DNA of 64,000 nucleotides from Sphaerodactylus townsendi (taxonomy: Eukaryota). The stretch spans positions 52,080,001 through 52,144,000 of the forward strand of contig NC_059427.1 of NCBI RefSeq assembly GCF_021028975.2. The letters run 5' to 3'. Made by a program: the position numbers and the translations under genes. A model generated the notes under the pieces. It saw only the letters and a list, made by a program, of their open reading frames with translations. It was not told the origin of the DNA and ran no database searches. Of the stretch, positions 6,130 to 50,900 are shown piece after piece. Position 1 is the stretch's first letter; every line of letters begins with the position of its first letter.

Positions 6130-6130
<1 letters not shown>

Positions 6131-6189
<59 letters not shown>
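6131..6189. repeat. (TG)25(CG)4 microsatellite
   Basis: Read directly from the sequence. Confidence 0.98.
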
Positions 6190-6190
<1 letters not shown>

Positions 6191-24039: not shown

Positions 24040-24960
24040 TCAGCAGGCGAGGAGGAATTTAGGGCAGACTGCTCACATGCGCCCTGTGACGTGAGGGCGC
24101 GCGAGGAGAGCTTGTGCCCCGATTTAGCTCGGCGTGGGGGAAGGGAGTGGAAAGTGCGCGCGCGCGCGTCCCCCCCCCCCGCCCGCCCGCCCGCCCGCCC
24201 TTTGAAGCAGCCACGTGCTCTGAGGCGCCTTGTCCTCAGCCGGCCTTTGCAGACAACCCCGCCGTAAACAAATGCAAAGCCCATCCCAACTTTGGTCCTT
24301 TGTAACTCGCCTCGCTAATTCCCGGTCTTGCGGCTCCAAGAACTATTGGTGCTGCCTTGGAAACACCTGCAACTTTTTTTTCTCTCCCCCCTTTTAAACC
24401 GCGAGGCGGTGGGCCATTGAAAGTCCTTCCTCCCCGCTCCCCAGTACAACTCGCTTGCCTCCTGCTCTGTGGCCCTTTCACTAAATAAATACAGCTGAAC
24501 CGGCCCTAGCCCCTCCGCACGTGCCAAAAGAATAAATCGCCCGCCTTGTCCACAGCCCCCACTTCAAATCTTCCTGCTGCTGCTGTGTTTGCTATTCTTA
24601 CTGCAGCTGTAGGGTTGCTGCAGAAGGAGAGAAAAAGATGACCTATGGCGGTCTTGGCTGGTGTGGCTAGTGTGAAAGACTCCCCCCCTTGTAAACCTTC
24701 GCTGCTGGCTTTTTCATGTATTGTGCTATGGCACTTGCCTTTTGTTGCAAAGTGCAAACACAAGCGCACGCACACTGCAAACGGAGGAGGGGAAGCGAGG
24801 GTGCAGCAGCCTCTTTGCGCTGTACTGCCCCGTCCAAAGCCTACGGGTTAAAACAAACATCAACAGTGCGTCAAATAGTTTGCCCGTAAGACTCTTTTGT
24901 TATGAAGATAAGCTTGTTATCTCTTTCATTCAGATTTTAATCTGACAGGTCATTTGCATA
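24040..24960. promoter_or_regulatory. orphan CpG island / promoter-like element
   Basis: High CpG and not TE-bounded. Motifs: GTGACGTG 24086, alternating GC tract 24156-24168, C11+(GCCC)5 GC boxes 24170-24200, CACGTG 24212 and 24518, GTAAACA 24264, ATTGG 24345, inverted GATA pair 24906-24922, ATTTGCAT 24952. Confidence 0.75.
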
Positions 24961-25796
24961 CTGCCAGCTGACTTCAGGGCTTGTATTAGATCCACTTTGC
25001 ATTTAAATCCTCTGTCAGTCAGCAAAATTAAAAAGAGGAGAGAGTAAAGACCTTCTTTCAGTGCCATTACTTTTTGTCTGAGTTTAATGGACCAAAAGGA
25101 AGTGTTTTCTCCCAAACTCTGGAACATCTCTGTTTATTTTCATTGCTATCCCAAAAACAGAATTACTTGTTAGGGTGAAGATTTAGATTTGAAATGGCTG
25201 ATAAGAATAAGAAGCATGCAAGCCTACTTCCCACTTGAGAAAAACCAAAAACATTCCAAAATAAATAGAATGAGTGTGCTAAAAATAGTCATATCTTGGC
25301 AAAACTTTTTACAGTGTGGGTGATAGCATTTCAAAACAGTCAGATGAGGGAAGCAGTACACACTGATCTGGAAGCACAGCCAGGGGTGGTTGCTCACCAA
25401 CCTTCCACCACTCTTATTTTGTGGCGCTTAGAGATCTCCAAGAGTTTTTAATGGATAAACCTTTTTGACTGACTTTCAGACTGACTGACTCTGAAAGTCA
25501 GCTGAGCTGAATTTCTCTTCTGGACTCGTGCTTGCTTCCCTTGACATTGCTTGTTCTATGGCTTTCACATGGTTCCAGAGATTTCTCTGGCATGCTTCCT
25601 TCAGAATGTATTTTAAAAAGTATCAATGTGTCACCGAGTATTGTCCGGAATATTCAAAAACATATGGACCCACAAGAATGGTACATGTTCTGTTACACTG
25701 TATGTTTCATTGTGTATATGCATCCTCTGCATAATGTTAGCAACCTCTACGTGGGGCCTGCAGTTCTCCTGGTGACAGAGATTAGTTCCTCTGGAG

Positions 25797-25934
25797 CAGG
25801 GTTCTTCAAACTATGGCCTTCCAGATGTTCATGGACTACAATTCCCATCAGCCCCTGCCAGCATGGCCAAGTAGTAGGGCTCATGGGAATGGTAGTCTAT
25901 GAACATCTGGAGTGCCATAGTTTGAAGAACCCTG
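25797..25934. mobile_element. 138-bp palindromic hAT MITE
   Basis: TIRs cagggttcttcaaact / agtttgaagaaccctg; perfect 8-bp TSD ctctggag. Confidence 0.93.
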
Positions 25935-25967
25935 CTCTGGAGAATATGGCAACTTCATCTCTTATGA

Positions 25968-26130
25968 CAATGGTTCCCAACCTGGGTTACACGTACCCCC
26001 GGGGCATGTGGCAGAACATTTGGGCGTACGTGAAAAAATTGCGTTAAGGGGTTTGTTAACATGAGGGTATACTTTTTAGGGAAATGGGTTGCCAAGGGGT
26101 ACACGAATGAAAAAAGGTTGGGAACCACTG
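25968..26130. mobile_element. hAT/Charlie-like MITE
   Basis: TIRs caatggttcccaacc / ggttgggaaccactg; decayed TSD tcttatga/ccttatgg. Confidence 0.85.
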
Positions 26131-27197
26131 CCTTATGGCATCACATCTCCACTGAGCTCCTTTTTGTACTTAGGCATTGCCTTCAAATTGCCAGCAAATT
26201 CCTAGGCTGGAGTTGGCAGCCCTTCCTTCATGCTGAGTTATAGCTAGGTAGCATGAGCAACTTTATGAAGCATCATAAAGCTTTTTATATAAAGCATCAT
26301 AAAGCTTTGCATAAGTTCAGGATCATGTACTGTAAAAGAACATGTACCATTCATGTGAATCCACATGATCTTGAGCATTTTGAGTATTCATTGGCATTTG
26401 GGCTTTTGCCCCAGGTAGTCTGAAAATATTCATTTTGTATACATTCATGTGTACTTGTATAACCATATTACTCACACAAATAATGCATCTGAGAAGATGT
26501 GTGAAGGCAGGGGATCACAAGGGGTAAAACTCCAACCTCCCTTATACCTGAAGGCAAAGAATGTTTCCCTAAGTCTTCTAAGATATTGTTTTCTTCTGAC
26601 CACTCCTGTACCTCTTTAAAATAAATATATATCTAAGGCAGCTTAGGGAACTGAGGTGATCCCCCCTTCACTCTATCTGTGTTATATCAGATAACCATTC
26701 AAGAAGATTTTTTTTAAGTATAGCAAAAAAAAGATAGAATTTTATTAAACACTTTAGGGGAATAGGACATGAGGGGATATTGGTAATAATAATAGAAGCA
26801 GTTTTATATACAAGTCTGAAGTTGTTTTCAAAGTTGAGCCCAGATTATATTTGGCTGAGTGTTCAGATTTCAGTTGGTTATAGAGTTCCTAATGCTTTAA
26901 AATATGGTAGACTTTACGATGTTTCACAGATTTTAACCCTGGCTAGCACTCAGAGGTTCATGTCCACTATATGGTGCCTGTAAACTATAGAGAAAGGAGT
27001 ATTCTCCCAAATGCTTTCTCTTTAAACTTCCCAGACTTTAGGACCACTTCATAGTGCTTGAAGTAAATCCTTCTGAAGAACTTGGGATGGGAATTTTTCT
27101 CCCACACTCAGTATAATTTCCCCTTCTGAGTAAAGAATTATTATATAAGGAGATTTCCTGGTAGGGCACTGTTGCAGCCCATTGTTGCACATGGTAT

Positions 27198-28208
27198 CAT
27201 AAGAACATAAGAACAAGCCAGCTGGATCAGACCAAAGTCCATCTAGTCCAGCTCTCTGCTACTCGCAGTGGCCCACCAGGTGCCTTTGGGAGCTCACATG
27301 TAGGATGTGAACGCAATGGCCTTCTGCGGCTGTTGCTCCCGATCACCTGGTCTGTTAAGGCATTTGCAATCTCAGATCAAAGAGGATCAAGATTGGTAGC
27401 CATAAATCAACTTCTCCTCCATAAATCTGTCCAAGCCCCTTTTAAAGCTATCCAGGTTAGTGGCCATCACCACCTTCTGTGGCAGCATATTCCAAACACC
27501 AATCACACGTTGCGTGAAGAAGTGTTTCCTTTTATTAGTCCTAATTCTTCCCCCCAGCATTTTCAATGAATGTCCCCTGGTTCTAGTATTGTGAGAAAGA
27601 GAGAAAAATGTCTCTCTGTCAACATTTTCTACCCCATGCATAATTTTGTAGACTTCAATCATATCCCCCCTCAGCCGCCTCCTCTCCAAACTAAAAGAGT
27701 CCCAAACGCTGCAGCCTCTCCTCATAGGGAAGGTGCTCCAGTCCCTCAATCATCCTTGTTGCCCTTCTCTGCACTTTTCTATCTCCTCAATATCCTTTTT
27801 GTTTGAGATCGTGACGATAGAGACTGGACACAGTACTCCAAGTGCGGTCGCACCACTGCTTTATATAAGGGCATGACAATCTTTGCAGTTTTATTCTCAA
27901 TTCCTTTTCTAATGATCCCCAGCATAGAGTTTGCCTTTTTCACAGCTGCCATGCATTGAGTTGACATTCCCATGGAACTATCAACTAAGACGCCTAAATC
28001 CCTTTCCTGGTCTGTGACTGATAGCACTGACCCCTGTAGCGTGTATGTGAAGTTTGGATTTTTTGCCCCTATGTGCATCACTTTACATTTTGCTACATTG
28101 AACTGCATTTGCCATTTCTGAGCCCACTCATCTAATTTATCAAGGTCCGCTTGGAGCTCTTCGCAATCCTTTGTGGTTCTCACCACCCTACATAATTTGG
28201 TATCATCT
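27198..28208 (-). mobile_element. young 5'-truncated CR1 LINE (RT C-terminus + 3'UTR)
   Basis: ORFs 27779-28186 and 27387-27749 encode the CR1 ORF2 C-terminus (LQADLDKLDEW..WQMQFNVAKCKVMHIG, LYKAVVRPHLEYC, FFTQRVIGVWNMLP); (TTCTTATG)2 tail; TSD tggtatcat. Confidence 0.95.
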
Positions 28209-28442
28209 AGAACAGAGGTTCACTCCCAACAAAAGAAAGGGGACAGCAGTTTTACTAAATGAGGCAGGCAAAATTATGTGTCTGCCAGTAGTCCATTCTG
28301 TTTTCCATGGTTGTTGCTGTCTTGCTGCTCATTTTCGCCATTAGAGGCAACTTTCTGCATCTTGGTTCAAACCACATCCCGTCCTTACATGTATTTCTGC
28401 TTTGATGGAAGAGATGCAAAAAAAGGCTACCTAGCTTTCCAG

Positions 28443-29324
28443 GGGCGATTTCGCACTCACTGTGTGAACTCAAGTTCGACCCAAGTGCTCCCCACATCTG
28501 GTGAATCTGACGTGGGCTCATCCTGCTCTGCTCTGTTCTGCCTTTAAATTTTCAACTCACCTCCGAGGTGGGGTAAACCGGCGAAGCTAAGTTGAACTCA
28601 AGCGAAGCTGATGGGAGTGGGGAATCTTCATCTGGTCGATTCGCCCGTTCAGCCAATCACAGATGAATGTTTTGGGCTTGCGCAGAACGGAAGACTTGTG
28701 CTGGCAAAAAGCGCACCTTTCCCCCCGCTTCTGTATAACACTGACGACCATGTGCAGTAACGAAGGGCAGATTGCATGCCGCTCAACATTTTTCCTTCAC
28801 AGCACCGTTTCGCCCAATCAATCGCACCTCATCCCTCCCTCCTTTCGGGTGGCATGTTATAAACATTTGTCATTTTGGAGGGGAGGTTGCCATTTTGATC
28901 TGACTGCTGACAGCTGAGCACAGTTGAGTCATGGCCAGCAGTTGCTCCACCTCAGGATCCATAACAGACAGTTCTGACAAGAGGATCAAAAAGATGCGTT
29001 TCCAGTGCGAAATGGAAATGAAAGCTACGAGCATAAGAATCTACACAAATTGCGCCTTCTTACGCACATTGCGTTGCGATGTCAACGCTACGTAGCTGTA
29101 ACGTTAAAAAATTGGGAAAAAAGGGATGCACGTTTGCATTCCCGCCTGAACGCAGCAGCCAATCAGGCACAAGTGAATGACGCGCCGAGGTGATCCCGCC
29201 CTCTGAACTCAGCTCCGGCAGGACAACCTCGGCTGCTGTGGGAAGTTATGAGGGGATTGACATAGGTCGACTCTTTCCGCCTGATGAGTCGACCTTATGT
29301 CAATTCTCAAGTGCGAAATCACTC
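28443..29324. mobile_element. non-autonomous PIF/Harbinger element
   Basis: TIRs gggcgatttcgcact / agtgcgaaatcactc; 3-bp TSD cag; CpG-rich; subterminal hairpin tgacataggtcgactc...gagtcgaccttatgtca. Confidence 0.88.
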
Positions 29325-30564
29325 CAGGTGAAGCCACAAACTACAGCCTTCTTACTTGTGAAATAGGTAGTATTCATCACCCTGAATGTAAGAGTACCTG
29401 GTGGATGAGACCAATGGTTTATTTAACCTAACATCCTGTTTTCCAGATGCCTATAAGCCCATAAACCGGTTATGAATATTCAAGCCTTCTCCTAGTGTCT
29501 TTCTGCCAACTAGTGTTCAACTGTCTTGGAATGTGAACGTATCTTTTAATCATCATGGCTAATAGATCTATTCTCCATGAATTGCTGCTGCTGTGCTGAG
29601 TCAACATTTTCATTGACTAGCTATCACAATCCCAGTATCAGATCCAAGTGGTATATATGTAGTTAGGATTGTTTGCTGTGGTATGCACCACTTATGCACC
29701 ACATATATATTTGCTGTGGTATGCACCACATATATATTTACATTAAATCCCATTTTCCGCATTGTTGCTCAGACAGTCAGCTTAGAGAGATCCTCTTGGA
29801 GCATTCCAGAACCAGCTTTGGTTATCCTGAATTATTTCTTTGCAAGTTGCGAAGTCAGCCACTGATTTCAGATCCATGGGAAAGTCCACTGCTTGTGTCC
29901 CTCCATTGTGAAAACTGTCTAATTACTTGTATTCATGTACTTGCTTCCTGTTGTGTATTCTGTTAGTAATGAAACAAGAAATCCCATTCTCTTGTTCCAT
30001 GACTATTAAGTTTAATCTGGAGCTTTTGGTGTGTGAATTTTGGAAGATCATTTGTAAAGTCTACCAGTTTGTAAAGTCTTGGATCCATTCCCAGGAGAAA
30101 AATGTTGAGGCTTTTCCTAAGCATAGGATTATTTAACAAATTACCTTTTCATATTTCTATTCAGTTGCTGTTTAATTAATTGTTCTCCATTATTTGTGCT
30201 TTCTGAGATTTATGTTTAGTCGTTAAAGATTCATTTTATTTGTGAAGCCTCTGGCTCGCCTTCACAAACACACATATACCTCTAAACACACATACATGTC
30301 AAAAAAGGGGAGGAGGGATTCTCTGGCTGATGGCAGCTCAAACTACTTGACTAACACCCCAGGCAAAGGGGGCTTGGGAAGGAAAAAGGTTTCGTAAACA
30401 GCCAGGTCTTCTTAGTTCTCAGCAAACTTTGGCACAAGAAAGCTGGAGACTTATGATATACAGGGTAGTACCAATGAGGCTGTACCATAGAAGACAGGCC
30501 ATTTTATTTGCAGACTGTTGCCAAATAATCCTATGGATGGAGTTTGCCTCTTCACTGCTGGCAC

Positions 30565-30646
30565 ACGGAGTTCATAATTTATATTGAGCCATTCATTATA
30601 AGCTTAAGGTTATAATGAATGGCTCAATAAAAATAATGAACTCCGT
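30565..30646. repeat. 82-bp near-perfect loopless palindrome
   Basis: acggagttcat...ttgagccattcattataa-gcttaagg-ttataatgaatggctcaa...atgaactccgt. Confidence 0.9.
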
Positions 30647-30649
30647 TCC

Positions 30650-31490
30650 TATATGCATGACCTTATGCTTACCAGTGCTGAAATTCATTTGACATTCCGT
30701 TTCAAAAGATCTTATTGAAACTTTTCACAACCCATTTTGGATTGCACCAACCTGAATAATTCGGTGTTGCCCAGAAATGTGTCCACTATATTGCCCATCC
30801 TCCATTCCCATATATAACAAATTAAATAGCACTGATCCCAATACCAATTTGTGTGTGAACCCCACTATCCACTTCCCTCTATTGTGAGAACTGTCCTACT
30901 CTCTGCTTCTTGTCTTTTAACAAAGTTTTAATCTATAAGAGTATCCTTCCCCTTATCTTGTGACTATTTATACTACTCAGGAATAATTGGTGAGGTACTT
31001 TGTCAACAGCCTCTTGGAAATCTATATACTATACGTTAGAAGGCTAGTATGTAATGTTTAGTTTTAAAATATTGGTTTTAACTCATGGTTTTTGTGCATT
31101 TTATGTATAATAAATGTTTTAAATAAATTGTGAATCACATGGTTCTGCTATCTCTCTGTTCCCTTCCGCACATGCAGAATAGTGCACTTTCAATCCACTT
31201 ACAAACAATTGTGAAAGTGGATTGAAAGTACATTATTCTGCATGTGTGGAAGGGGCCTCTGTATTCCTTAAGCAATTCTTTCCTTCCCTTGTCATCCAAT
31301 GGCCCAAAATGCTCCCTAGCTGATTTCCTGCTTCTGATATATTTGAAGATTTGTTTTAAAATATCAAAGCCATTTGCATCTCACATTGTCTTTTTGCTCA
31401 ACTTATTGTCAGCCCACAATATTGTTTCGCAAAAAACAGTGATCCTTTCTTTTTACATCTTTTGGAAAAACCTTCCATTTTTTACGATCT
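30650..31490 (-). mobile_element. old degenerate CR1 ORF2 fragments
   Basis: Reverse complement of the Y.DF.KAFDKVPH-like RT segment (ggtactttgtcaacagcctcttggaaatctatata) and of the G..LG.VLF segment; interrupted by a MITE. Confidence 0.65.
31158..31257. mobile_element. 100-bp palindromic Harbinger-type MITE
   Basis: cccttccgcacatgcagaata...tattctgcatgtgtggaaggggcc; TSD tct; same family as 3557 and 61049. Confidence 0.88.
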
Positions 31491-32323
31491 AGGACCTACT
31501 GTCTGCCTTAACTTCATGATGACAGAGAAGATGTCAACATGAGAGTAGGCCATGTTTAGTTCAGAGGATTATTCATGGAGAAACGGCTACTTCTTTAGTG
31601 GGGTATGCTTTTCCGACCCCTATCCTTCCCAAATGAAACCAAGCCAGAAGAAGAACCAAAATGGGACACTGTAAGAATGCCTTATAAAGTAATAGTGCCA
31701 TCCTAAGAGGGTCTACTCAAGATCCTACTCACTTCTATTCAGTAGAACTTACTTCCAGGAAAGTATCTTTAGGATTGCATTGTAAATCAGTTATTGCTGG
31801 GTCATGTTCTAGCCGAGGAAAATATATGCATATGTGCTTTGGGGCTGTCTTTGGGGCTGTGTAGGGATGGGTGGAGGAAGGGGAAAGTGAGGATGAGGTA
31901 TGAGTCTGAAATTGTGTGCATCGAGGAATGCTGCTGTAAATTTCGTTGTATGTGCACAATGACAATAAAAATGCTTATGCTTTGAATGTGCCCAACAGCT
32001 GTAATATGCTCACTGGAAAACTCTTACAAAACTGGTCTCTTGCTAAAACACATGTGCATCAGACAAACTGTTTTGAAATAATAACTTCTACCCATGAATT
32101 GTGGCATTGTCATCTTTTCATCAGAAGATCTGTTGAAATACAAATCTCAGCCAGTTGGGAGCATTTAACCCTTCTTTTAAGACTGACATTTTAGGGGTTA
32201 AAGTTAACCTCCCATGCTATATGTTTGTGTGTATGTGGAATTAGGAACTGTGGACCAGGTGGGATTGGAAAATTATATTTATGTGGCTGGTTTTTAAAAG
32301 TATTGTAATCTACCATTTTGGGT

Positions 32324-32448
32324 TCAGAGGATGCCAGCCACAGATGCAGGCAAAACGTCAGGAGAAAATGCTACCAGAACACAGCCATGCAGCCCAGAAA
32401 CCACACAACAGTCCAGTGATTCCAGCCATGAAAGCCTTCGACAATACA
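32324..32448 (+). mobile_element. Penelope-like element terminus with a decayed minimal hammerhead ribozyme
   Basis: cagagga-tgccagc-cacagat-gcaggc-aaaac-gtc matches CUGANGA-stem II-GAAAC-GUC with two substitutions; followed by ...gaaagccttcgacaatac. Confidence 0.7.
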
Positions 32449-35400
32449 GTGGGCAAATCCCCACTGGGAAAATAAACCTGGTTTCCCCTGGTTCCATAAG
32501 ATACAGCACCTTTTCATCCCAGTCTCTGCCTCCACACTGTGGGAAATCACCCAGTATCTTATCCTCCCTCTCCACAACCTTAGAATACATGAACACGGTT
32601 TCCTCTGAGAGCAGTGTGTGTGAGACAGGTTTTTCAGTACAGCAGCTAAGTCTGCAATCACTGCCCCAATCCCTGATTTCTTCTTTCCCCTGTCCCTTGT
32701 ACTCCTGCTGTGTTTTTTTAACGCTTACTATTTATCAATATATTAGCAGGAGCACTGCAGTAATTTATCAAAAAATTGAAGGACAGGGTAGAGAATGGAA
32801 GCAAGTTTGTCCTTTTCCCAAAGTCCTGCTGTTCCATCCCCACAAACTTCCACTGCAACTCTGGTGCACTTTCCCAAACTTGCAGTGTGCCAGGAAAAGC
32901 AAAAGAGGCTGCCATATAAGAGCAAGAAAAAAAAAGAAAAGAAAAGGACGGCTTTAAAAAGGAGGGAAGATTGGATTTTCTCATGAACAGAGCTATCAGT
33001 AAAGGAAATTGGGATTTCTTTGATGATTAGAAGGCCTGAGTAAGATCTCATTTAATTTCTGATCCTTAACATAAATACAAGGTTCAGTTGTAAATCAGCA
33101 GCTCCTTTTCTCTCTCCCCTTTTCTGCTATGGTAGCTAAAGCATATTTTAGATGTTATTTTGGGATTGTGAGGACTGGAAACATGTTTTTAAAACAATTT
33201 CTCAGCATACCATAGAATACTATGTGTACAATATATATATGCTGTCTAGGATGTGAGCCTTAAATGGAGAAAGAGTATTGTGTGTTTATGGTTAATCTAA
33301 TTCTGACCCAAAGTGGCTCCATAATGTTTTGTATGAGTATTCTTAGCCATTTTAGAACAATTCTGGTTTCCTGCATTGTCTGCTTCCACCCTTCAGTAGC
33401 AGTGCTACTTCTGTTTCTCCTTGCATTTTCACTTCAGACAATTTTTATTAACACAGGAAATTGCCTCAGAATTGATACTGACTGGGTGTGCTGGGCCTAG
33501 AATGGTCATTTCAGTTGTTATCAAAAACATTGATGGTGGAATGAGTTCCAGGGTTTTAAGACTGAAAAAGACGAATTGGATTAAATTTAGAGTGGAAAGT
33601 GAGAGATTATAGTTCACATGCAATTTACAGGAAAACAATCAAATGTGTAACTTGCAGCAGCAAAATGTGTCAGCTAGAAACCACAACATCTTTGAAAAAT
33701 CATTTACTCATGCGAGTGTTCTCTGGTATTTGATGCCCTTCCAGTGCATATGCTGCAGATGACAGGATATGAGGGAATGTTTTATGGCAGTGGTATAATT
33801 TTTTTATGTTCATGCTAACATCTGTCCAGCTGAGGACCTCATTAATGATATGATGAAATGGTTTTGTAAAGATTTTGGAAGGTTTAGCCATCAACACCAA
33901 GCTGATGATATATTCAGCATTTTTCTCTGAACACCATAGAGTGGTATGAAATGTACTTCTAGGAATTGTATCACAGCCATGACTGTGTGCACCGTTATAG
34001 GGAGCACAGCAGGAACTGTGGTGAGGACATATGCCAAACGACAGCAATCATTTTGAATAAGTGAGTTACAATTGCTTGCTTTCAATCAGCTATTCTTTAG
34101 TTATTTCCAGGTTTTCTAGAATCTGCAGCTGTACAAGCTCTCTGGCGGGGCTGGATCAAGCTCAAGGATTGTAGACCTCTCCCCACCTTCCCCTTTTCTA
34201 TTCTAAGCCTGGGGAAAGTTTGTCTCAGGCTGGCAAAACCTGTGTGGAAAAATAGCCAAGCAGGTCAGGAGGGTGCAGTAGGGAGGAAGTAAAATTGCTT
34301 CCTTTTTTCTTCCATAAGTGGAGCTACTCCCATAGAAGAGACAGAGAGATTTTGTCTTCTTTCTTCTCCTCACTGCAGACCAAACAAGACATAACAGCGT
34401 CAGCCAGTTTTGTTGTTTATTTATTTGTGCTATATGCCCCAACTTTCCTGTCCCTGTTGGTGCTCAAAGTAATTGTTCACATGTCTGCCTCATTCATGTA
34501 TAGTCTGTGTGTGTGTGTTTAGTATTAAGGGCACTAACATATGAGCTGCAAAACCCTTCCCACTTGCCCCATCACACTCTGTTGCTTCATGAACCTTCCT
34601 CTCTTTACACAGTTTTAATTTCCCTTGTAGAGAACTGCACTGAAGGAATGACCAGGCAGTGCAAAATTATTTTGCTGTGGAAGCAACAACAAGGAAATGT
34701 CTTCATAGGAATTTCTTCCTTTTTATTGCTTTATGATTCGGGTGATGTTTCTTGAAAGAAGCACCAGAAGCCATGTTGTATCTTGAGCTGTGTTATCTTC
34801 TACCATCACTGGCCTTGCCATGGATGCTTCAGATGAGTGGGAGCAATTCCCTCCATTTCATGATCTAACAAGTACATTTTTATCCTGCTCTTCCTTCACA
34901 GAATTCAGGAGGTATGATTTACATGGAGCAAATTACCTTTATTTATAAAGCACTTAACATGGTTAGGAGCTGTAAAAAGTGTATTTTTAAGTGGAGCAGG
35001 CCCGCTTCAGCTTACAATCCTTCAGCCCCGTTTTCTGTCTCTTCAGTTGTGCAGATGTGTTTACTTTGCTATTCTGAATTATGCATTTCTATCATCAATA
35101 CCGGAAAGATGAGGCCAAACTTCTCAAGCATGATTTGGTAGTTCAAATGCAACTAATACTCCATGCAATACTTAGTATATACATTTGCCTGCTCCTGGTA
35201 CGTCAAGCTAAATAGCCAAAATATACTTGAAGCTGCAGAAGGTTGACATAATCACATATGTTGGTCAGAAAAAGAGTAAAAGTAATGGCTAGGTCTGGAT
35301 CAACTCAACAATGATCTTCATTGTGCCAATGAGATAGTTTCACATTCCAGCCAAATTAGTTCCAAAAGACCACATTATAAAACACCAAAGTACAATGAAC

Positions 35401-35556
35401 CCAAGCAAGATGTGCTACCGAATCATTACCATATTGTATAAAATGCATACATACCTAGTATGCAGATCAGTGAAAAAAGTATTGAACAAGTACCCACTGC
35501 TCAGCAATTGAACACACAACAACTGAAGGACTCAGCAAATTTCTGGTAAAGTCAGA

Positions 35557-35942
35557 GGCCGTTTCCGATGGGCATTTAATGGCGGCCTGGAGACGGCAAA
35601 AACGCCGTCTCCAGGCCGCCATTCGCACAGGGGGCGCAGCTGCATCGCAGCCGCGCCGCCCTTGCGCCGCCCTTGCGCCGTGAAGCCGGCGTTTCCCCAG
35701 AACGCTAGGAAGCGCTCTTGTTGGGGTAACGCCGCCTCGAAGCCGCTGCCGAGCGAATGGCAGCAGCTTCGAGCCACCTCCCCCACCCTGCACTTACCTT
35801 GTCCCCGGGCCTCCGGCGCGTCGCCGAGGCCTGGGGACACGCCCCCCTGCCCTGCGCTGCTGGAGTGCGGATGGTCCCAGTGTCGTGGGGTCAGCGTCGG
35901 AAACGCCGACCCGGCCGCTTCCGCATTCGTGCGGAAACGGCC
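35557..35942. mobile_element. GC-rich PIF/Harbinger-type MITE
   Basis: TIRs ggccgtttccg / cggaaacggcc; TSD aga; subterminal hairpin atggcggcctggagacggc..gccgtctccaggccgccat. Confidence 0.9.
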
Positions 35943-36034
35943 AGAGTCATGGTGACAAGAAATCATCAGGACCACCATCTGCTGAATGTTCAATAATTCA
36001 ATATATCACCCACCAAACATCTGTACAAGTAGAT

Positions 36035-36490
36035 AGTTTATTGTTGTAACTACAAGGTCACAGCAAACACAGAATCACAAGAAATAAACTTGACCATGAA
36101 ATACAGATATGCTACAAAACTATGAAATACAAAATGCCAAAAACAGTTACTTGCTGATCAAGACCACAAACTATAATTTAGCCAGATGTCTTACAACATT
36201 AACCAGTAAAATATTTTCCTTATTTTAAAAGGTAGTTGGTCAAAAAATAGCCATTTGTCGACTGGCATATGGAAAAAATCCACCAGTAAAAACTTAGTAA
36301 GTTCCACGTTTGAGCCAGTAAAGTTGATAATAATGTAGGCCAGCCACCTTACCCTTTTAACGTCATAGAAGGGACAATATAAGATGTAGTAGTGTTTAAG
36401 ATCTTCCATGTGATCCTGGCTGAAGGGGCAGAAGGGCTGCTCAACAGAAATGTCATTATATCTGCCTTCAAAATATGCTGAAGGCATAGT
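36035..36490 (-). mobile_element. 3' end of a non-LTR retrotransposon (RTE-X-like, C-terminal zinc knuckle)
   Basis: ORF 36191-36487: GRYND...FCPF...MEDLKHYYILYCPFY..R, a CCHC-type C-terminal motif. Confidence 0.7.
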
Positions 36491-36712
36491 GTGGAAACAA
36501 AAACTAGTGAATTCCTTTCCTAATGAAGGGTTAGTAAAGTTGACTATGAAGAACTGTGAAGTTCATTTATTTTTCTTAAAAGAAGGATACGAAGGGGAGA
36601 ACTTTGAGTGTGGAATCAGAATAGCTTCTTGACTGACATCAAACTCGTGAAACTCATGAAATTGAATATTTTATTTTATTTTATTTGTATCCTGTGATTT
36701 AACCATCTCTAA

Positions 36713-37208
36713 GGCCGTTTCCGCAAGCCTCATTCACGCCAAGAGTGTGGGCGGCGAAAGCGCAAGTCCGTTAAGCATGCAAGCATGCGAACGGGAGAAG
36801 CGGAGGCCGGCAGAAGGCAGGCGGCTCCGCGACGGAGCCACCTCTGCGCTTCCTCTTCACTCGGTGTCCTCCTCGTCGCCTGCGGGCGTCGCAGCCCCAC
36901 TATCGCTGCCCTCCGACCCCTGGAGGTCGGAGGACGAGTGTGGGCGGGCTGACGCCCCGCAGGCGACGAGGAGGACACCGTGAGTAGGGCGGAGACGGGA
37001 GACAGCGTCTTCCCCGGGAGGCGCTGTTCGCGACCGCGCCACAGTGGAAGACGCTCCCTCCCAACAAACAACCCTTTAAAAGGGTTAGTTGTTTAGGCGT
37101 TTACGCCCTGGGGGGAGGGAAGAAGAGCCAGGCCTGTGCGAACGGCGGCCTGGGGGCGCCTTTTTTGGCGCCCCCAGGCCGTCATAAATGGGCCGTGCGG
37201 AAACGGCC
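36713..37208. mobile_element. GC-rich PIF/Harbinger-type MITE
   Basis: TIRs ggccgtttccgca / tgcggaaacggcc; canonical TAA TSD; hairpin cggcctgggggcgcc..ggcgcccccaggccg. Confidence 0.92.
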
Positions 37209-38223
37209 TAAGACATCCATATAGGAAGAAGGACTCCCCTGCCTGCAAACTCATTGCTCCATATTCAGCAATAAGGGCTTGTCATCAATAGTATTCCTGC
37301 TAGTTAATTTAAAAATCATGAAAGATTAATCTTTGAAATTCAGCAAATTTACAAAGATTAGGTAAAGGGGAAGGGTAGAAACAAATTGTATCTTATTAGC
37401 GGTTTATTTAACAGCAAGACCAGGTTTTCACAAGATGTTCCATCAAGAAAAAGAAGGCAACAAGTTACCATACAGTAATAATAAAACCTTTTGTGTATAA
37501 CCTTTTTAAGGGGATCATCTTACATTCAGGTCATCTTTCCTTTGGGTAAATCCAGTCTTATTCAGACATTTAAATCTTCATAACAGCAGAGTTTAATTTA
37601 AAAAATGTGGATATCAGACCATTTCACCAGAAATACAGACAACACAACATTTCTTAATTTTTAATAAATACTTCATTTCAATGTAAAAATGTCAAACCTT
37701 TACAGAAAAACTTACTCCCCAAAACAGACCACTGAGACTGCAGGCCCTCCTTTATCTGAAGCTCAAGGTGAAAATGAACTAGCAACAAGGATAAATTCTT
37801 TGGGAGAATCAAACATAATTTTTTGTCATTTTAAATAAGAAAAAGCAGCCATGGGAATGCAAATGAAGGGCAGGACAGCTAGCTTCTCATTTTATCTTAC
37901 CTGATTCCTCTCTGTTATGCAACTCCCATCTCCCATCACTTTTATCCATGCAGCTTCCACAATCAGAAGCATAACCATTTTGGTGATCAAAGAAAACCTT
38001 CTCCCCCTTTCCTTACCAACAGAAAAGATGGTTGGATCAGAGCCAGAACTAGGAGGGCACAGGGGGCAGTTGCCCTGGGAGGGGGCAGAGAGCGGGCAGC
38101 AGCAGGAGGATGGAACAACTTGTTCTGCAGTGTGTCCACCCTGTCCCCCTGGTTAGGCTATTGCTAGGAGATGGCGGAGTGGAGAGAGAGACTTAAGAGT
38201 GGAGTTGTAGCCCTTGATAAGGC

Positions 38224-38613
38224 AGAACCAGGGGGCATACATTGAAAATACTGGGGGGAAGAATTAGGACTAATAACAGGAAACATTTTTTCACGCAACA
38301 TGTGATTGGTGTTTGGAATATGCTGCTACAGGAGGTGGTGATGGCCACTAACCTGGATAGCTTTAAAAAGGGCTTGGACAGATTTATGGAGGAGAAGTTG
38401 ATCTATGGGTACCAATCTTGATCCTCCTTGATCTGAGATTGCAAATGCCCTAGCAGACCAGGTGCTCAGGAGCATCAGCATCAGCAGCAGGCCATTACTT
38501 TCACATCCTGCATATGAGCTCCCAAAGGCACCTGGTAGGCCACTGCAAGTAGCAGAATGCTGGACTAGATGGACTCTGATCTGATCCAGCTGGCTTGTTC
38601 TTATGTTCTTATG
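38224..38613 (+). mobile_element. CR1 3' end nested in the Pack-hAT
   Basis: High similarity to the 3' part of the CR1 at 27198-27590; (ttcttatg)2 tail; 4-bp gcag junction duplication. Confidence 0.93.
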
Positions 38614-38635
38614 CAGCTGTTAGTAGGGCAAGATT

Positions 38636-38725
38636 ATGGTGAGCAAAGAAGAGGGAGAGCTAAAGGTACCAGAGGAGATGTTCAGAGATGTTAAGCTCTA
38701 TGCCATGGGAGACCTAGATCCCCAG
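38636..38725 (+). pseudogene. PAXIP1: captured, CpG-decayed copy of PAXIP1 (PTIP) coding exon 1
   Basis: [30 protein letters not shown]|gtaacc versus recalled human PAXIP1 [27 protein letters not shown]. Similarity ends exactly at a GT donor; no exon 2 (VIQLLKAGKAKEV...) found in the window. Confidence 0.85.
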
Positions 38726-39189
38726 GTAACCTTCCCTGATCTCACTAATCTCCCTCCACTCTTCCACCTTCCAATGCATTGTCTTCCCACCCTCCTTTCA
38801 AGTATTGTGACTGTGGTAAGCTTTGAGCATGTGAAACTTCTGGAGGGTGGGGCATGCTTTAAATACAGCGGTTGATGTTTTTGGGGCTAGTGACTGTTAA
38901 TGTTTTAGAATACCCATTGCACCCCTGTTTCCATGCCCACCCTGCCTTGTGCTCTGCTGAGGCACAGCAAGCCCTGGAGCAGCCTGAGGTTGATTTGGGT
39001 GGAGGGGGAGAGGACACGCTCATCTCTCCTCCCCCTGACTTTTAAACTGGGAGCTATGATATTCTTGACTTTACCAAAGGTCACAAGTAGACCTGCCCCC
39101 TCAACTGATGGACTTGGCCTTCACCAAATAACCTAATTTTATGCTCTGAAAAAGGGGTTGGGGACAAGAACACAAAGCCCGTTCACATG

Positions 39190-39400
39190 CTTTGTGTGTC
39201 TTCAAGTCACTTCAGACTTATGAATCAATGACCTCCAAAACATCCTCTCAGTACCCTTGTTCAGGTCTTGCAAACTTAGGACGGTGGCTCCTTTTGTTGA
39301 ATCAATCCATCTCAATGTTTCCTAGCATTATTGTCCTTTCCAGTGAGTCTTTTCCAGTGATTAAAATACAGTGGCTTCAGTTTAGTCATTTTAGTTTCTA
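39190..39400 (-). mobile_element. RTE-BovB-like 3' fragment inside the Pack-hAT
   Basis: tgtgtgtcttcaagtcacttcagacttatg...caggtcttgcaaact...gaatcaatccatctc...ttcctagcattattgtc resembles a reverse-complemented squamate BovB 3' end. Confidence 0.65.
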
Positions 39401-42400
39401 GCAGCATAATTACTAGATAAAGCTTTTCTTGAGCTATATTTTTTAGGCCGTGAAGGAGAGCGAGGTGTTTTTGGTGTTTTCCTTGTCAACGTTATGTGTG
39501 CTTCTATTTCAAGAAATGTCCAGGAAAAAGCTAAGCTGAAAAACTTTCTCCTTGGGTTGGGCGTTTATGTATGCAGAGGGATTGAGCGAATATCCAAACA
39601 TTATAGATTGATAAAATAATGTAAAAGTGTTATTATTCATTAACAGTTCATAGAGGTAAACATAAGTTACTTTATCATCTAAATGATTTGTTGATTATAT
39701 ACATATATCAAAAGAAAAATGTGTGTATAATATATGGGGGGCATTTTGTACTTTTGTCCCCCTTAAAAATGTAGATCCAACCCTGGGTTGGATCCAATCC
39801 AATAACCTAAGTCCTAGGTAAAGTGAGTTTAGACTCCTCTCTTCTTATGCTGAACATTGAAAGAGGATCTATCGAAGTAAAAGTTGAGGTGTTTTTGCAG
39901 AGAACTCTATCAAAGCATCTACTGCTCAGAAGAAGTTAAAAGAACCTTTGCCTGCATCTCATAGGAATGTATTAAACTGCCTTATTTTGTGTCAAAACGT
40001 TAGTCCATCTAGATTAGTGATATCTTCTTTGACTTGAAGTGGCGCTCCAACATCTCAAGTGAATAAGTCTCTGTGCTATGTGACCTCATTTACCTAAAAA
40101 TACTACTAAGTGAAACTGGAACCTTCTGCATGCAAAGCATATTGCCTTGTTACTAAGGTGTGGCCCTTCCAGGGCTGCAGTTTTTTTGCCAGGGGTGGAG
40201 GATCCCCTATGCTGGCTCTCATTTCCCACCACTTTTCAAAGCAGTGACTGTCTGCATGATATTACCTCTGGGGAAAATCCAGAAGTAACGTCGTGCTTCT
40301 CTAGGAATCACCAGAAACCACAGTTTCCAGACATTCCTATAGCGGTATGACATTACTTCCAAGTTCCCCCCGGAAGTGATGTCATGCCTGGGGTGACGGT
40401 GTCCCCCATGTCTCCACTCCCTAGATTCCTGGCACTTGGCAGACCATGCATGTTGCTTAGACTCCTCCCCTAGTGTTAGTTCATGTGGAAATGAGCCAAT
40501 GTACAGAGCAATATGGGACTGTGTCAGGGGGCAGGGCCAAAGTTGCTTTCCCCTTCAGCCAAAACTTGATTCAAAATGTGTCCCCATTGAAAAAAACAAA
40601 CTGGCCACCAACCAAACAAGTTGGTCTTACAGAGTTTGATGTGAGTTGCTGATTTAATTGTCTTTCTCTCTTTGCTTTATTTTTTGAAATAAAAAACTCT
40701 GACCTATACATATACACCTACATGCACCAGAGAATGAAAATCAGCTTTGAGAGTATTGCATGCCAGAAATGGTAATGATTTCAAGATTCCTGAAAAGTTT
40801 ATTTAGGCATTTCAATGAACCTTATATAAAAAAGGAGCATATCTACAGTAATAAGTAGATACGGTACAGATGGGTTCCAAAATTTTTGATTTGGGGCTTT
40901 GCAGAACATTGGTTTCAAGTTAAGGAAGAGGCAGAACATTAAACGCTATGATTGCAATGTGCCTAACAAACTGCAGGAAATAGAAGCTAAGTAAGGCAAA
41001 GCCCTCAGCTCCACTAAGAGAGCCCCACGTCTGTGCAGAAGAGACTTGGGTTTCAGCCAGTGAGTTACTTAAAACATACAAGAAACAAAAGACAAATGAT
41101 TTTGACCCCAAGATATAACTCCATTTTGTGATATCCAAAATATTGTCAGTCATTTGTATACGAAGGGTACATTTGCATGTTTACTTGCCCGCCAAAGTCT
41201 GTGGTTTCCCCTTATTTCCTTGGATTATGATCCCGCCACTTTGCTAAGTCCTGTTTCATTCTGTTTTATTATTTCACTGTGCATTTTTGTTGCATGGTGA
41301 ATTAAATATCATAGTGCTGATCTTGAATTAGGGAGAAGGGGATTCTGCCTTTTCACGATAGTTATCATCCAAAGATAGTGGCTCTCCATGGCCCCCTCTC
41401 TTCATGGCATTTCTTCAGAGGTAAGATGTGCTCATGTGGGGTGATGAAATATGTGTGTATTCCACATTTGCAGAAGGTGAGAATTACTGTCTGCTTGGTG
41501 TGTTATCCCCAGCCTATAAGACAGAGACCACATTGATCACATACTTCTGATAATACTACTTGTTTGCCATGATTAGTTCCATTATTTTTAGACAGTAAAT
41601 TAGATTTATTTAGTACCAGCCATGTGCTAGGGAGGGGGGTACATAATGGCAAACAATAACATTCTGATAACAGCAACAGCAGGTAATAATGAAGTAATAA
41701 AAGAAGAGAAAAGCAACTGGTGGCCAAAGGCCGAGTCCAACCTTGATGAATAACACATTTGGCCTATAATTAGTTAGGAAATAGCTAGTTAATTTTACAG
41801 TGTGAACTTAGTTGTCTGATGATCTCCCCTTCCCCTCAGATGCCCATATATACTTCAGATGCTCAAAAGTCCTTGAGTTGGGGTCCTGGACTTCTGTTCC
41901 AAAGATCCAGTTCAGAGAGTACTACTGCCCTGATCTGCAGGGTGCTCTTGATGATTTTCCTCAGCCACTTTCTCTGTGAGTCAAGATCCTGCTCAGAGTA
42001 TCTAAATGACTTTCTTACCAGTGCAAATAATGGCAGGTGTTTGGGTAGAGCATTTTCTGAATTGAAGGGCTTTAGCTGCTCACTGTGCGAGCCAAACTGG
42101 ATGTTACCGTGGCTGTGGGTCTGACCTGTGACCGCTGCTGCCATTTCAGAGAAGAATTTGGTCATTTAAAAATGCTAAGGGGGCCAAATCCTCATTGGCC
42201 CTGTGCTGTGGCTTTTCATCACCTCCTGCACCTTTCCCAATTCCCAAACTGCCCCCTCATGGCTTGGAAAGGTGTGGCGGGACACAGAATTGCCTGGTCC
42301 TGCCATACTGTGGGCCCAGTCAGGGTTGCCTGCTTGCAGCACTTTTTAAATGGTGAAATTCTTAAAACAGCACTGGTGGCCATGAATCGGGCCAACGGCT

Positions 42401-47956: not shown

Positions 47957-50900
47957 AAGGGAAGAGAACCATCTAGAAAGATTTTAAACATTATTTGGGG
48001 GAAAACTCAAGTAGAGTTGCTGCCTACCCTGATTTTTTTAGGGAGAAAATCTATAAACTGATGTGAAACAAGATTTTATTCTTCCAGGGTGGAAGAATAA
48101 GAGGAATAGCATAAAAAAAGCTCTTTGGAAACAAGCTCTGAGTTTTTTCCAGAGATTCTCTGCTTATCAGATAGCTGTCATCGCACAGGAAAATTTCTAT
48201 ACTGATCAGTTTTTCCAGCTACAGAGAGAAGATACCTCTTCATATCTGTGTGACATCATGTGTGTTTTCTTCCTTGGAGATCAGTTGGAAAGCAACTAGT
48301 CAGCCTTGATTAGTCCCACCCTGTTTACTTGCACCAAAGGTAATTTCATATGCTATCACCCTGGTTCAGATTATACTTTTTCTTTGCCTGTTCCCTGCAG
48401 GATCATGTCTTCCCACTCCACTCCTAGGTATGCCTGTCTCACTTCTGCCATCCCTGGATATCCATGTAGCAACCCTACACACATGTGATACAAACAAGGG
48501 ATAGTGCCACCTGAACCACTTCGCTGCCTTGACCCCAGAAAAATCCACAACCTACAGGCAGAATTAGGGCTAACCAATTTTAAACCAATCCATCAATGAA
48601 TCTTCACATAAATAATCTTTAACTGTGGTGTGAGGTACAGCCAGCAAGTGGCCTACCAGCACTTTAAGCTAATACACCTTACCTCTAAACTCAGCCAGCA
48701 TTACTGCCAACTTTATTTACCTTAGTCTACGTATAAGATGCTGCCCGAAAAATCAGGGCTCTGCTATATGTCTACTAAGTGCACACATTACCCCTTTCAG
48801 ACTAAATGCTAATTGTGCATATTGGAAGGATCGCATGTAGCAAATTTGGTTGAAAAGGGCTAGCAACAGTTTCCCTATTGAGAAAGATGAGGGGTGACTC
48901 CAGGTATTCTTTTAATTCCTCTCTGCAATAGGTAGTCATTGGTGTCAAATAAGAAGAGGCTTCAGGGATTGGGGATTCTGTATGCTACTGTAGCAGGTTG
49001 TATGCTCCAATGCACAACTTACACACACAAACACAAAAAACCCAGCCCCTTCCTAAAACAGTTCAGAAGAGTCATCTGGAGTAGGGGTGGTTGGTGGGAC
49101 CCACACATAAACATAATATAATTAGAATGGAAAAATTTGCGGCCAACCTGACAGCCTACTTTGACAAGACTCCTTTCCCCTGAAATGCCCTGCTTGGGAT
49201 TTTCATCTTGTGCACACAATATTTTGACATTTGTGCTTTCTTGGCTTCGTTTCTGAAGCCCAATGGAGCCCACAGCCTAATGAAAATGAGGGTCATTATT
49301 TTTCCTCATCCTCTCAGGATAATAATAGCTTTTTATAATGTAAAAAAGGCAGAATTAATCTGTTTAAACTGTCTGCTTCCTGACCTGGGCTTTATCACCT
49401 GAGGGAACAGAGGCAGAACAAACTGGTCTGGTGTTTTTAAGGACTAGAAAACAAGGAAGGAAGGATGATGAATGGGACAATATAGTTTGGATTCTGAACA
49501 AGACAGAGAAAAGATAAACCTTTGGGTCCATGATCGTCTCTCTGGGAACACATTAAAAGGTAGCAGACTGGCTGCCACCCTATGGGACTGTCCCTTTTGC
49601 CTACTGGAAGCAGCCGTGGATCATGAGAGGGGGCAACACTGAGACTGGATCCCAGCCAGCTAGGGTGACACTAGGTCCCTGCACTGGTCTGACTTCCAGC
49701 TGATTGGCAGTATGGAAGCAGAGCCCTTGAGACTTCACAGCCTGACCAGAGACCTGGGGCAGTCAGCTTATGCCAGCCCTGGACAGGAGCTTGAAGTGGC
49801 CACTCCTGACCGCATTCAGCGGAAGTTTCTCTCATGAGGAGACAGGAATAAAAAGAACTAATGTATGGCCTCTGAAGTGGAATTTAAAGCTGGGTTTGAG
49901 TTGGCTGAGAAGGATGCATCATGCTGTTGAACTAGAGGAGAACATATGAGACAGGAAGACTGAGGCTGCCTTCAAATCTCCTTCCATCTTGAACTGAATG
50001 ACTGAGTGGGTGGGTGGGTGGTGTGGGGTGGTGGGGACCTTTCTGGTGAACTGGAACAGCCTGAGAGGGAGATGTCAGCAGACTCTTCTTCTTGCAGGAG
50101 CTGAAGTAGGAGGGTAAGGATATAGTGAGCAATTCACAGCATCCCTAGGATCCAGTACCACCCTGAGGCTATGAACTTGCTTCTCCTCCACAGCAAGTGC
50201 AATCCCATCTAGGACAGGTTGACCTGTCCTCCAGTAGCTTTGCCATTAACCAGCAGAACACCGGGCTGAATCTAGGGGGTGAGGGGGGCAGATGTCCCAG
50301 GGCTGTGGGCAGAGAAAGGGCAGCAGCAGGTGGAGGAGACTCAGTTGCCCTGAAGAGATGTCTCATTCTGTTGTGCGCACACTGGTTCCCCCCAATTAGG
50401 CTGCTGTCAGGATGTGGGAGAGGCTCAATTATCCAGCAGAGAAGACTTATTCTGCAATCGGGGAGGGCTTAGCCCAATGAGTCTGCTGCTAGAAGGTGGA
50501 GGAGGACCAGTTGCACAGAAGAGATGGCATGTTCTGTAGTGTGCATGGCTGATTCCCCTTCCGATTCTCCAAAGTGGCAGGCACCATATTGCAAGGGTTG
50601 GCATGGTGTCTGCCAACATATTTCCTGGTGTCCACTTGCTGCTTTAATCTTGAGACCACGAGTCACTCCTGCCAATGGATTGGCTATCAATGTGCTGAGC
50701 TCATCCTCGTACATCACAGTCATGAATCCTTAGCTTCCTGCGGTATTTTTGGAAACAGCAAACAGCATCCCTTTTCCAAAGCAAAAGCCAGTCTTGCCTT
50801 TCATCTACCTTTTTGGTTCTGAAACTACGTCAGAAGAACCCAGGAGCCATTGTATCAGCAAGGAGTGCCCATTCAGAAACAGTTGCCTTTATCATAAAAG

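What the first reader, a model, noticed from the sequence alone, without database searches (positions are those of the whole stretch)
38030..39793. Pack-hAT: a reptile DNA transposon that has captured exon 1 of PAXIP1/PTIP
Seen in sequence: a 1748-bp unit bounded by decayed inverted termini (cagagccagaacta ... tagatccaaccctg) and an exact 8-bp duplication GGTTGGAT. Inside is a 90-nt ORF matching the PAXIP1 N-terminus and ending at a GT donor, flanked by GC-rich, TG/CA-enriched DNA. Established: 8-bp TSDs with CAGGG termini mark hAT elements; PAXIP1 is a BRCT-domain DNA-repair/MLL3-4 complex subunit; gene-fragment capture is well known for plant Pack-MULEs and Helitrons but rarely reported for vertebrate hATs. 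Inference: the capture was DNA-level because the donor and intron-like sequence are retained, so it is not a retrocopy. The element may belong to an undescribed family that spreads a housekeeping promoter/first-exon cassette.
Basis: partly seen in the sequence, partly recalled or inferred. Interest (0 to 1): 0.9.

Follow-up and report, generated by a model that had tools for sequence, protein, structure and literature searches.

The report
Gecko transposon carrying decayed PAXIP1 start
A 1.75-kb cut-and-paste (hAT-type) transposon copy in a gecko genome carries a dead DNA copy of the promoter, first exon and start of the first intron of the housekeeping gene PAXIP1. This is a real but old and inert example of gene-piece capture, a process already known in animals.

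Summary
GGTTGGAT occurs only at 38030 and 39786. It brackets a 1748-bp unit with CAGAG.../...CCCTG ends. The 30-codon ORF at 38636-38725 ends at a GT donor.

A CpG-rich contig (L001) from another sequencing run carries what looks like the native gene start. Its core promoter is conserved in two further sauropsid loci. Window 38068-38223 and 38614-39245 are collinear with L001 from about 200 bp upstream of the ATG to at least 715 bp downstream, intron included. A BovB-like repeat sits at the same intron position in both. So the copy was made from DNA, not from RNA.

All 44 CpGs of L001 are lost in the window copy, 30 of them to TG or CA. The 390-bp CR1 is a clean nested insertion. This is not the real gene.

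A second, partial copy at 50261 shares the 30-bp left terminus and its junction with the promoter, but has a different flank. Contig depth suggests tens of copies in the genome.

Weak points:
- No empty site was found; three related organisms all have the insertion.
- No second full copy and no transposase were found.
- The inverted ends match at only 9 of 14 positions.
- The "duplication" equals an octamer inside the element's own terminus.
- The name PAXIP1 rests on my memory of the human N-terminus.

This scan has already noted PAXIP1 exon-1 copies and cargo-carrying hATs elsewhere in this genome. Verdict: new member of a known kind.

The parts
38030..38037 (.). Left copy of the 8-bp direct repeat GGTTGGAT (putative target-site duplication)
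   Evidence: The octamer occurs only here and at 39786 in the window. Homology to copy 2 stops exactly here.
38038..38067 (+). Left terminus (CAGAG..., about 30 bp), not derived from PAXIP1
   Evidence: Absent from L001. Shared with 50261-50290. Matches the right end read inward at 9/14, or 15/30.
38068..38223 (+). Decayed PAXIP1 core promoter / 5' leader copy
   Evidence: Collinear with L001 541-717. The core motif is conserved in L001, L002 and L003.
38224..38613 (+). Nested CR1-type LINE 3' end
   Evidence: 91.5% identical to 27198-27584. Absent from L001, whose sequence is continuous across the insertion point. Mass loose ends at 38224 and 38611/38613. Also present in organism C.
38614..38635 (+). 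Last 22 bp of the 5' leader
   Evidence: Aligns to L001 718-739.
38636..38725 (+). PAXIP1 exon-1 coding copy: 30 codons, ATG kept, followed by a GT donor at 38726-38727
   Evidence: Translation. 83% nucleotide and 80% amino-acid identity to L001/P0001. Six sauropsid exon-1 read-through ORFs hit at E 3.5e-7 to 9e-4.
38726..39189 (+). Copy of the start of PAXIP1 intron 1. 38754-38939 is missing from a subset of other copies.
   Evidence: Collinear with L001 830-1404 at 61-66% identity. Joints 38753>38940 in other contigs.
39190..39411 (-). BovB-like interspersed repeat fragment that was already in the donor intron
   Evidence: It starts at the same position in L001 (1405-1454, 77% identity). Depth is about 1000x with loose ends at 39318/39351. 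The BovB name, the minus orientation and the end at about 39411 are from memory.
39412..39771 (+). Right arm of unknown origin. 39505-39721 is a fragment of a more abundant repeat.
   Evidence: Contigs at 80-87% identity lie on 39505-39721 and continue with unlike sequence on both sides (table 8). No protein-family signal.
39772..39785 (-). Right terminus; read inward it is CAGGGTTGGATCTA
   Evidence: Sequence. The terminus of copy 2 matches it at 11/14, a score reached by 0.011% of positions. Depth is about 60x at 39740 and at baseline by 39880.
39786..39793 (.). Right copy of GGTTGGAT
   Evidence: Forms a palindrome with 39774-39782.
50261..50560 (+). Second, partial family member: same left terminus and the PAXIP1 promoter copy with a tandem duplication, but no exon
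   Evidence: 72% identical to 38049-38144. Shares with copy 1 a derived insert that L001 lacks. Its left flank is different (GCAGAACA), and no right end was found.

Best explanation
This is an old, inert copy of a non-autonomous hAT-type DNA transposon (a 'Pack-hAT'). Its interior is a genomic copy of the 5' end of PAXIP1: about 200 bp of core promoter and leader, the 30-codon first exon with its splice donor, and at least 620 bp of intron 1, including a BovB-like repeat that already sat in that intron.

Inferred history:
1. A hAT element acquired the PAXIP1 segment. The likely route is interrupted gap repair or template switching after excision, as proposed for Pack elements.
2. A transposase supplied in trans moved the composite. 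It spread to tens of copies, with deletion derivatives.
3. One copy inserted here and produced the 8-bp duplication.
4. The former CpG island was methylated and lost every CpG.
5. A CR1 later landed 22 bp upstream of the ATG.

Shown: the cargo's origin and DNA-level copying, the CpG decay, the nested CR1, the recurrent left terminus, the multi-copy state, and the presence of the insertion in related organisms.

Inferred: hAT transposase as the mover, the capture mechanism, and present inactivity.
For: Origin of the cargo:
- L001 is CpG-rich (GC 0.6-0.69, CpG observed/expected 0.65-0.93) and encodes P0001, which is 80% identical to the ORF.
- Its core promoter is conserved in L002 and L003.
- Window 38614-39245 is collinear with L001 718-1454, and 38068-38223 with L001 541-717.

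Decay:
- 0 of 44 L001 CpGs are kept, and 30 are now TG or CA.
- Changes from C to T and G to A number 106, against 29 in the reverse direction.

Termini and duplication:
- The exact 8-bp repeat abuts both boundaries.
- Both ends fit the YARNG motif that Novick et al. (PMC3014272) give, together with 8-bp duplications, as the hAT signature.
- Copy 2 at 50261 shares the 30-bp terminus and a derived promoter structure but has a different flank. Its terminus matches the right end at 11/14.

Copy number in run X1 (baseline about 75-90): about 4000 at 38683-38815, 5000-6700 at 38949-39214, and about 5300 at 39740. At 39104, 48 distinct contigs carry a letter different from the window's.

Cargo and context:
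- No coding remnant was found in the right arm.
- Lizard hAT/hobo elements incorporate genomic DNA that carries old repeat fragments (PMC3014272).
Against: - The termini are only 9/14 complementary.
- The duplicated octamer equals positions 4-11 of the right terminus, so it may not be a simple target duplication.
- It fits the hAT target pattern nTnnnnAn (recalled from memory) at only one of its two fixed positions, the A at position 7.
- Depth of the left part (38018-38150) is only about 3-4x, against about 45-70x for the cargo. Most cargo copies may therefore lack this left end or may have spread another way.
- No empty site was seen: organisms C and E and run X8 all have the insertion.
- No second complete copy with its own duplication and no autonomous partner were seen.
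- Copy 2 has no identifiable right end.
- An earlier follow-up in this scan judged that four other copies spread by cluster duplication, not by transposition.
Confidence: 0.62

Rival explanations
1. The PAXIP1 5' fragment is a dispersed repeat spread mainly by segmental or tandem duplication, or some other process that does not use a transposase. On this reading the CAG...CTG ends and the 8-bp repeat at this locus are coincidental, or a by-product of repair at a palindrome-prone site.
For: - The octamer equals part of the supposed terminus, giving a 9+9 palindrome at the right junction.
- The termini match at only 9/14.
- The left part has low depth compared with the cargo.
- Two copies lie 12 kb apart in the same orientation.
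Against: - Homology to the donor stops 30 bp inside the boundary.
- Those 30 bp recur at copy 2 with an unrelated flank.
- The terminus of copy 2 matches the right end at 11/14, a score reached by about 1e-4 of positions.
- The flanks are at single-copy depth.
Confidence: 0.2
2. The element is a deletion derivative of an autonomous hAT. In that parent, the captured PAXIP1 promoter, first exon and donor served to transcribe the transposase and splice onto it. This 'promoter piracy' layout was proposed elsewhere in this genome for ETNK1.
For: - The cargo is exactly promoter + exon 1 + donor + intron start, in one orientation.
- Earlier notes report the same kind of cargo (ETNK1, ZFC3H1, APE2-like) in hATs of this genome (unchecked).
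Against: - No transposase remnant in the unit.
- No acceptor or downstream coding exon was identified.
- No RNA run was available.
- hATs are known (from memory) to prefer inserting at gene 5' ends. That alone would bias captures towards promoters and first exons.
Confidence: 0.1
3. This is the true first exon of the functional PAXIP1 gene.
For: Intact ATG, open 30 codons and a GT donor.
Against: - No CpG island; all 44 donor CpGs are lost.
- A CR1 sits in the leader.
- Depth is multi-copy.
- A CpG-rich version exists elsewhere (L001).
Confidence: 0.02

Closest known systems
Pack-TIR / Pack-hAT elements of animals (Tan et al. 2021, Nat Commun, PMC8277862)
   Same: A non-autonomous TIR transposon whose interior is a duplicated piece of a host gene. 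hAT is the commonest carrier (208 of 370). The frog multi-copy case shown there carries a 5' UTR fragment and is supported by distinct duplications.
   Different: - The words lizard, Anolis and reptile do not occur in that paper's main text.
- Multi-copy cases were very rare there (4, in a frog and an alligator). Depth here suggests tens of copies.
- The cargo here is a complete promoter, first exon, donor and intron cassette.
- Here the distinct duplications of other copies could not be checked.
Anolis hobo_AC and its non-autonomous hAT families (Novick et al. 2010, PMC3014272)
   Same: - These are lizard hATs with 8-bp duplications and YARNG ends.
- They incorporate large pieces of genomic DNA that happen to contain old BovB, CR1 or SINE fragments. 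The BovB-like piece here was likewise already in the donor intron.
- The termini resemble each other loosely: TAGGCTTGATC and CAGAGCCGGYCC there, CAGGGTTGGATC and CAGAGCCAGAAC here.
   Different: - That paper does not describe gene promoters or exons as cargo.
- Sequence relatedness of the termini is only suggestive.
- Different lizard lineage.
Plant Pack-MULEs
   Same: Capture and amplification of host gene fragments, often 5' ends, between TIRs.
   Different: Different superfamily (9-10-bp duplications, long TIRs), plants, thousands of elements.

Membership tests
hAT superfamily (non-autonomous member) | 8-bp target-site duplication | tested here: met
   Exact GGTTGGAT at 38030 and 39786, abutting both boundaries. 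Caveat: it equals an octamer inside the right terminus.
hAT superfamily (non-autonomous member) | Terminal motif YARNG and short terminal inverted repeats (PMC3014272) | tested here: met
   Left end CAGAG; right end read inward CAGGG. The inverted repeat is 9/14 (11/14 for copy 2 against the right end). With one 9-nt gap the match seems to run to about 24 nt, aligned by eye only.
hAT superfamily (non-autonomous member) | Target-site consensus nTnnnnAn (recalled from memory) | tested here: inconclusive
   In GGTTGGAT, position 7 is A as expected but position 2 is G, not T.
hAT superfamily (non-autonomous member) | Termini shared with an autonomous element that encodes a hAT transposase | not testable with these tools
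   No transposase in the unit. The rest of the genome cannot be searched here.
Pack-TIR (transposon-captured gene fragment) | Interior homologous to a host gene located elsewhere, copied as DNA | tested here: met
   Collinear with L001 from about -200 to at least +715, intron included. L001 lacks the terminus motif.
Pack-TIR (transposon-captured gene fragment) | Mobilised after capture: several copies with the same ends and different duplications | tested here: inconclusive
   Copy 2 shares the left terminus-cargo junction with a different flank. Depth suggests tens of copies. No second complete copy could be read.
Pack-TIR (transposon-captured gene fragment) | Empty orthologous site in a relative | tested here: not met
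   Contigs of organism C cross both junctions and a contig of organism E crosses the right one. Run X8 (labelled organism D) matches the window without any difference. This shows only that the insertion is older than these splits.
PAXIP1 (PTIP) gene, exon 1 | N-terminal peptide and the exon boundary after ...DPQ | tested here: inconclusive
   Six unnamed sauropsid contig ORFs begin with the same peptide and then read into a GC-rich intron. The name PAXIP1 rests on my memory of the human N-terminus. No named protein or Pfam hit could be obtained.

The most novel reading that the evidence does not exclude
hAT transposons of this gecko lineage may systematically acquire CpG-island promoter + first exon + splice-donor cassettes of housekeeping genes: PAXIP1 here, and ETNK1, ZFC3H1 and an APE2-like gene in other notes of this scan. 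They would use them to drive transposase expression or to escape silencing. On this reading the element here is a deletion derivative of such a 'promoter-pirating' hAT, which reached tens of copies. That copy number would be unusually high for an animal Pack-TIR.
Probability: 0.12. Interest if true: 0.75.

Novelty: new member of a known kind. Interest (0 to 1): 0.35.

Why it matters
Gene-fragment capture by DNA transposons is well documented in plants. In animals most reported cases are single-copy. A lizard hAT that carried a whole promoter, first exon and donor cassette to tens of loci would add a clear multi-copy vertebrate example. When young, such copies could have seeded chimeric transcripts or alternative promoters.

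This particular copy is old, methylation-decayed and interrupted by a LINE. Its value is as a well-mapped fossil, with capture breakpoints defined against a native-type locus, not as a functional element. The same cargo and similar hAT captures have already been noted elsewhere in this genome by this scan, so the interest lies in the genome-wide pattern and not in this locus.

Tried and rejected
- Tool-based naming of the peptide failed: PDB sequences, Pfam, word-indexed protein searches, a full-text paper search, and the ESM Atlas, which was busy three times.
- Fetching other genomic copies failed: exact-protein look-ups of two window ORFs and a homologue search with the ORF of copy 2 found nothing.
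- The search for a right end or duplication of copy 2 found nothing.
- The motif search for later PAXIP1 exons gave only chance hits. One hit, near 40270, lies in a palindromic repeat.
- I did not run a Pfam scan of all 240 downstream open segments, because it would have needed very long repetitive calls.
- The bacterial promoter/terminator scan was irrelevant except that it shows the junction hairpin.
- Real-gene reading: rejected.
- Retrocopy reading: rejected, because the intron and promoter are kept.
- CR1 3' transduction as the spreader: considered and not favoured. The CR1 is absent from the donor-type locus and interrupts collinear sequence cleanly. It is also much younger: 91.5% identity between the two CR1 copies against 72% between the two element copies.
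- No RNA run holds the stretch, so expression could not be tested.
Full report
**Observation**

- GGTTGGAT occurs on the + strand only at 38030 and 39786 in the 64 kb.
- The 14-mers next to the two copies, CAGAGCCAGAACTA and TAGATCCAACCCTG, are 9/14 complementary. Only 0.23% of window positions match the right end that well.
- The unit between them is 1748 bp.
- The ORF lies at 38636-38725 and translates to [30 protein letters not shown]. It is followed by GTAACC.
- The surrounding DNA has GC about 0.47-0.57 but almost no CpG: 0-2 per 200 bp.
- 38224-38613 is a LINE 3' end. A 91.5% identical copy at 27198-27584 on the minus strand continues into reverse-transcriptase-type ORFs (Pfam RVT_1 E = 0.001). 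Hundreds of contigs from four runs break at 38224 and at 38611/38613. I call it CR1 from memory of its octamer-repeat tail.

**What the cargo is**

A search of 1.84 billion representative proteins with the 30-residue peptide gave six related hits at E from 3.5e-7 to 9e-4. All six are short unnamed ORFs on Logan contigs. Each contains M..[23 protein letters not shown](Q/K), at or near its start, and then reads on into GC-rich sequence. They are first-exon read-throughs from other sauropsid genomes.

The name PAXIP1 comes from my memory of the human N-terminus ([27 protein letters not shown]). No tool could attach a name.

The best hit, P0001 (80% identical), lies on the 1474-bp contig L001 from another sequencing run. 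L001 has GC 0.6-0.69 and CpG observed/expected 0.65-0.93. About 100 bp of its sequence upstream of the ATG are conserved in the loci of two further hits, L002 and L003. L001 contains nothing like the transposon terminus. I therefore take L001 as a native-type PAXIP1 promoter, exon 1 and intron 1.

**Capture breakpoints**

- Window 38614-39245 is collinear with L001 718-1454. This covers the last 22 bp of leader, the exon (83% identity), the donor, about 460 bp of intron (61-66% identity) and the first 56 bp of an abundant BovB-like repeat. That repeat starts at the same place in both sequences.
- Window 38068-38223 is collinear with L001 541-717.
- The two blocks meet exactly where the CR1 sits, so the CR1 is a clean later insertion 22 bp upstream of the ATG.
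- The copy was therefore made from DNA. It spans at least about -200 to +715 relative to the ATG.
- The BovB-like fragment came along with the donor intron. Novick et al. describe the same thing for Anolis hobo elements (PMC3014272).
- The right breakpoint cannot be placed because L001 ends inside the repeat.

**State of the copy**

- None of the 44 CpGs of L001 in the aligned part survives in the window.
- 30 of them are now TG or CA.
- C-to-T plus G-to-A changes number 106, against 29 in the reverse direction.
- This is the signature of a former CpG island that became methylated.
- Together with the CR1 in the leader and the multi-copy depth, it excludes the real-gene reading.
That is a weak test.
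- The open 30 codons need no selection to explain them at this level of divergence.

**Is it a transposon?**

Four lines of evidence support this.
- Homology to the donor stops 30 bp inside the left boundary. Those 30 bp (38038-38067) recur at 50261-50290, followed by the same promoter copy. The two copies share a derived insert that L001 lacks. Sequence to the left of the two termini is unrelated.
- The terminus of copy 2, CCGGGCTGAATCTA, matches the right end read inward, CAGGGTTGGATCTA, at 11/14. Only 0.011% of positions reach that score. The ancestral inverted repeat was therefore about CAGGGYTGRATCTA.
- Both ends fit YARNG and the flanking repeat is 8 bp. Novick et al. give these as the hAT signature.
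- On the right, depth in run X1 is about 5300 at 39740 and back to baseline by 39880. The flanks are single-copy.

With both boundaries fixed independently to within a few bases, an exact 8/8 flank match has a chance of roughly 1e-3 or less.

**Copy number and age**

Run X1 matches the window without any difference and has a baseline depth of about 75-90. Summed contig depth along the unit:

| Region | Depth |
|---|---|
| 38018-38150 | about 300 |
| 38683-38815 | about 4000 |
| 38816-38948 | about 970 |
| 38949-39214 | 5000-6700 |
| BovB-like part | about 100,000 |
| 39350-39746 | 20,000-40,000 |

- At 39104, 48 distinct contigs carry a T where the window has an A.
- Some contigs join 38753 to 38940, so a 186-bp deletion derivative exists.
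- The depth tool warns that these figures are not copy numbers. Read loosely, they point to tens of cargo copies.
- The 39505-39721 stretch is a fragment of some larger, more abundant repeat. Other contigs continue on both sides of it with unlike sequence.
- Contigs of organism C (about 3% divergent) cross both junctions and enter the CR1.
- A contig of organism E (about 6% divergent) crosses the right junction.
- Run X8, labelled organism D, matches the window without differences.
- The insertion and the CR1 therefore predate these splits. No empty site is available.
- No RNA run holds the stretch.

**What does not fit**

- The duplicated octamer is identical to positions 4-11 of the right terminus. 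As a result the right junction is the palindrome GATCCAACC-ctg-GGTTGGATC. The left junction reads as two tandem terminus-like 11-mers. The chance of this is about 1e-4. Possible explanations are insertion into a terminus-like target, a repair artefact, or coincidence.
- The left 110 bp have far lower depth than the cargo.
- Copy 2 has no recognisable right end.
- No transposase remnant is present.
- These points keep a non-transposase route of spread alive. One example is duplication of host clusters, as an earlier follow-up in this scan concluded for four other copies.

**Comparison with what is known**

- Tan et al. 2021 (PMC8277862) found 370 Pack-TIRs in 100 animal genomes, 208 of them on hATs. 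Only four were multi-copy: three in a frog and one in an alligator.
- Novick et al. 2010 (PMC3014272) showed that lizard hAT/hobo elements incorporate genomic DNA.
- This scan has already noted PAXIP1 exon-1 copies in four other windows of the same genome, and hATs carrying ETNK1, ZFC3H1 and APE2-like gene starts.
- The present element is thus a new member of a known kind.

**Verdict**

- Observation: confirmed.
- Interpretation: partly supported. DNA-level capture and the multi-copy state are solid; hAT mobilisation is likely but not proven.
- Confidence in the Pack-hAT reading: 0.62.
- Interest: 0.35.

Noticed in passing
window 35558-35945 and 36714-37209: Two GC-rich, CpG-rich (GC 0.65-0.72, CpG observed/expected about 1) elements in opposite orientation. 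Their termini read GGCCGTTTCCG.../...CGGAAACGGCC. They have apparent 5-bp flanking duplications (CAGAG; CTAAG) and internal palindromes. Their ends are 80% alike over 77 bp. They look like young or unmethylated MITE-like transposons, not gene CpG islands.
   Followed up: partly
window 50340-50440 and 50480-50560: The PAXIP1 core-promoter-like motif of the second element copy is duplicated in tandem.
   Followed up: partly
window 39505-39721: Fragment of a repeat present in hundreds of copies. The other copies continue with unlike sequence on both sides (table 8). Identity unknown.
   Followed up: no
window 27198-28186 (minus strand): Longer CR1-type LINE 3' part with reverse-transcriptase-tail ORFs. 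Its 3' end is 91.5% identical to the copy nested in the element.
   Followed up: partly
window 40250-40340: Palindromic repeat that gives nearly the same peptide-like string on both strands. Contig depth is elevated, about 2700.
   Followed up: no
window 39772-39796: 11-pair hairpin formed by the element's right terminus and the adjacent duplicated octamer. The target octamer equals part of the terminus; unexplained.
   Followed up: partly
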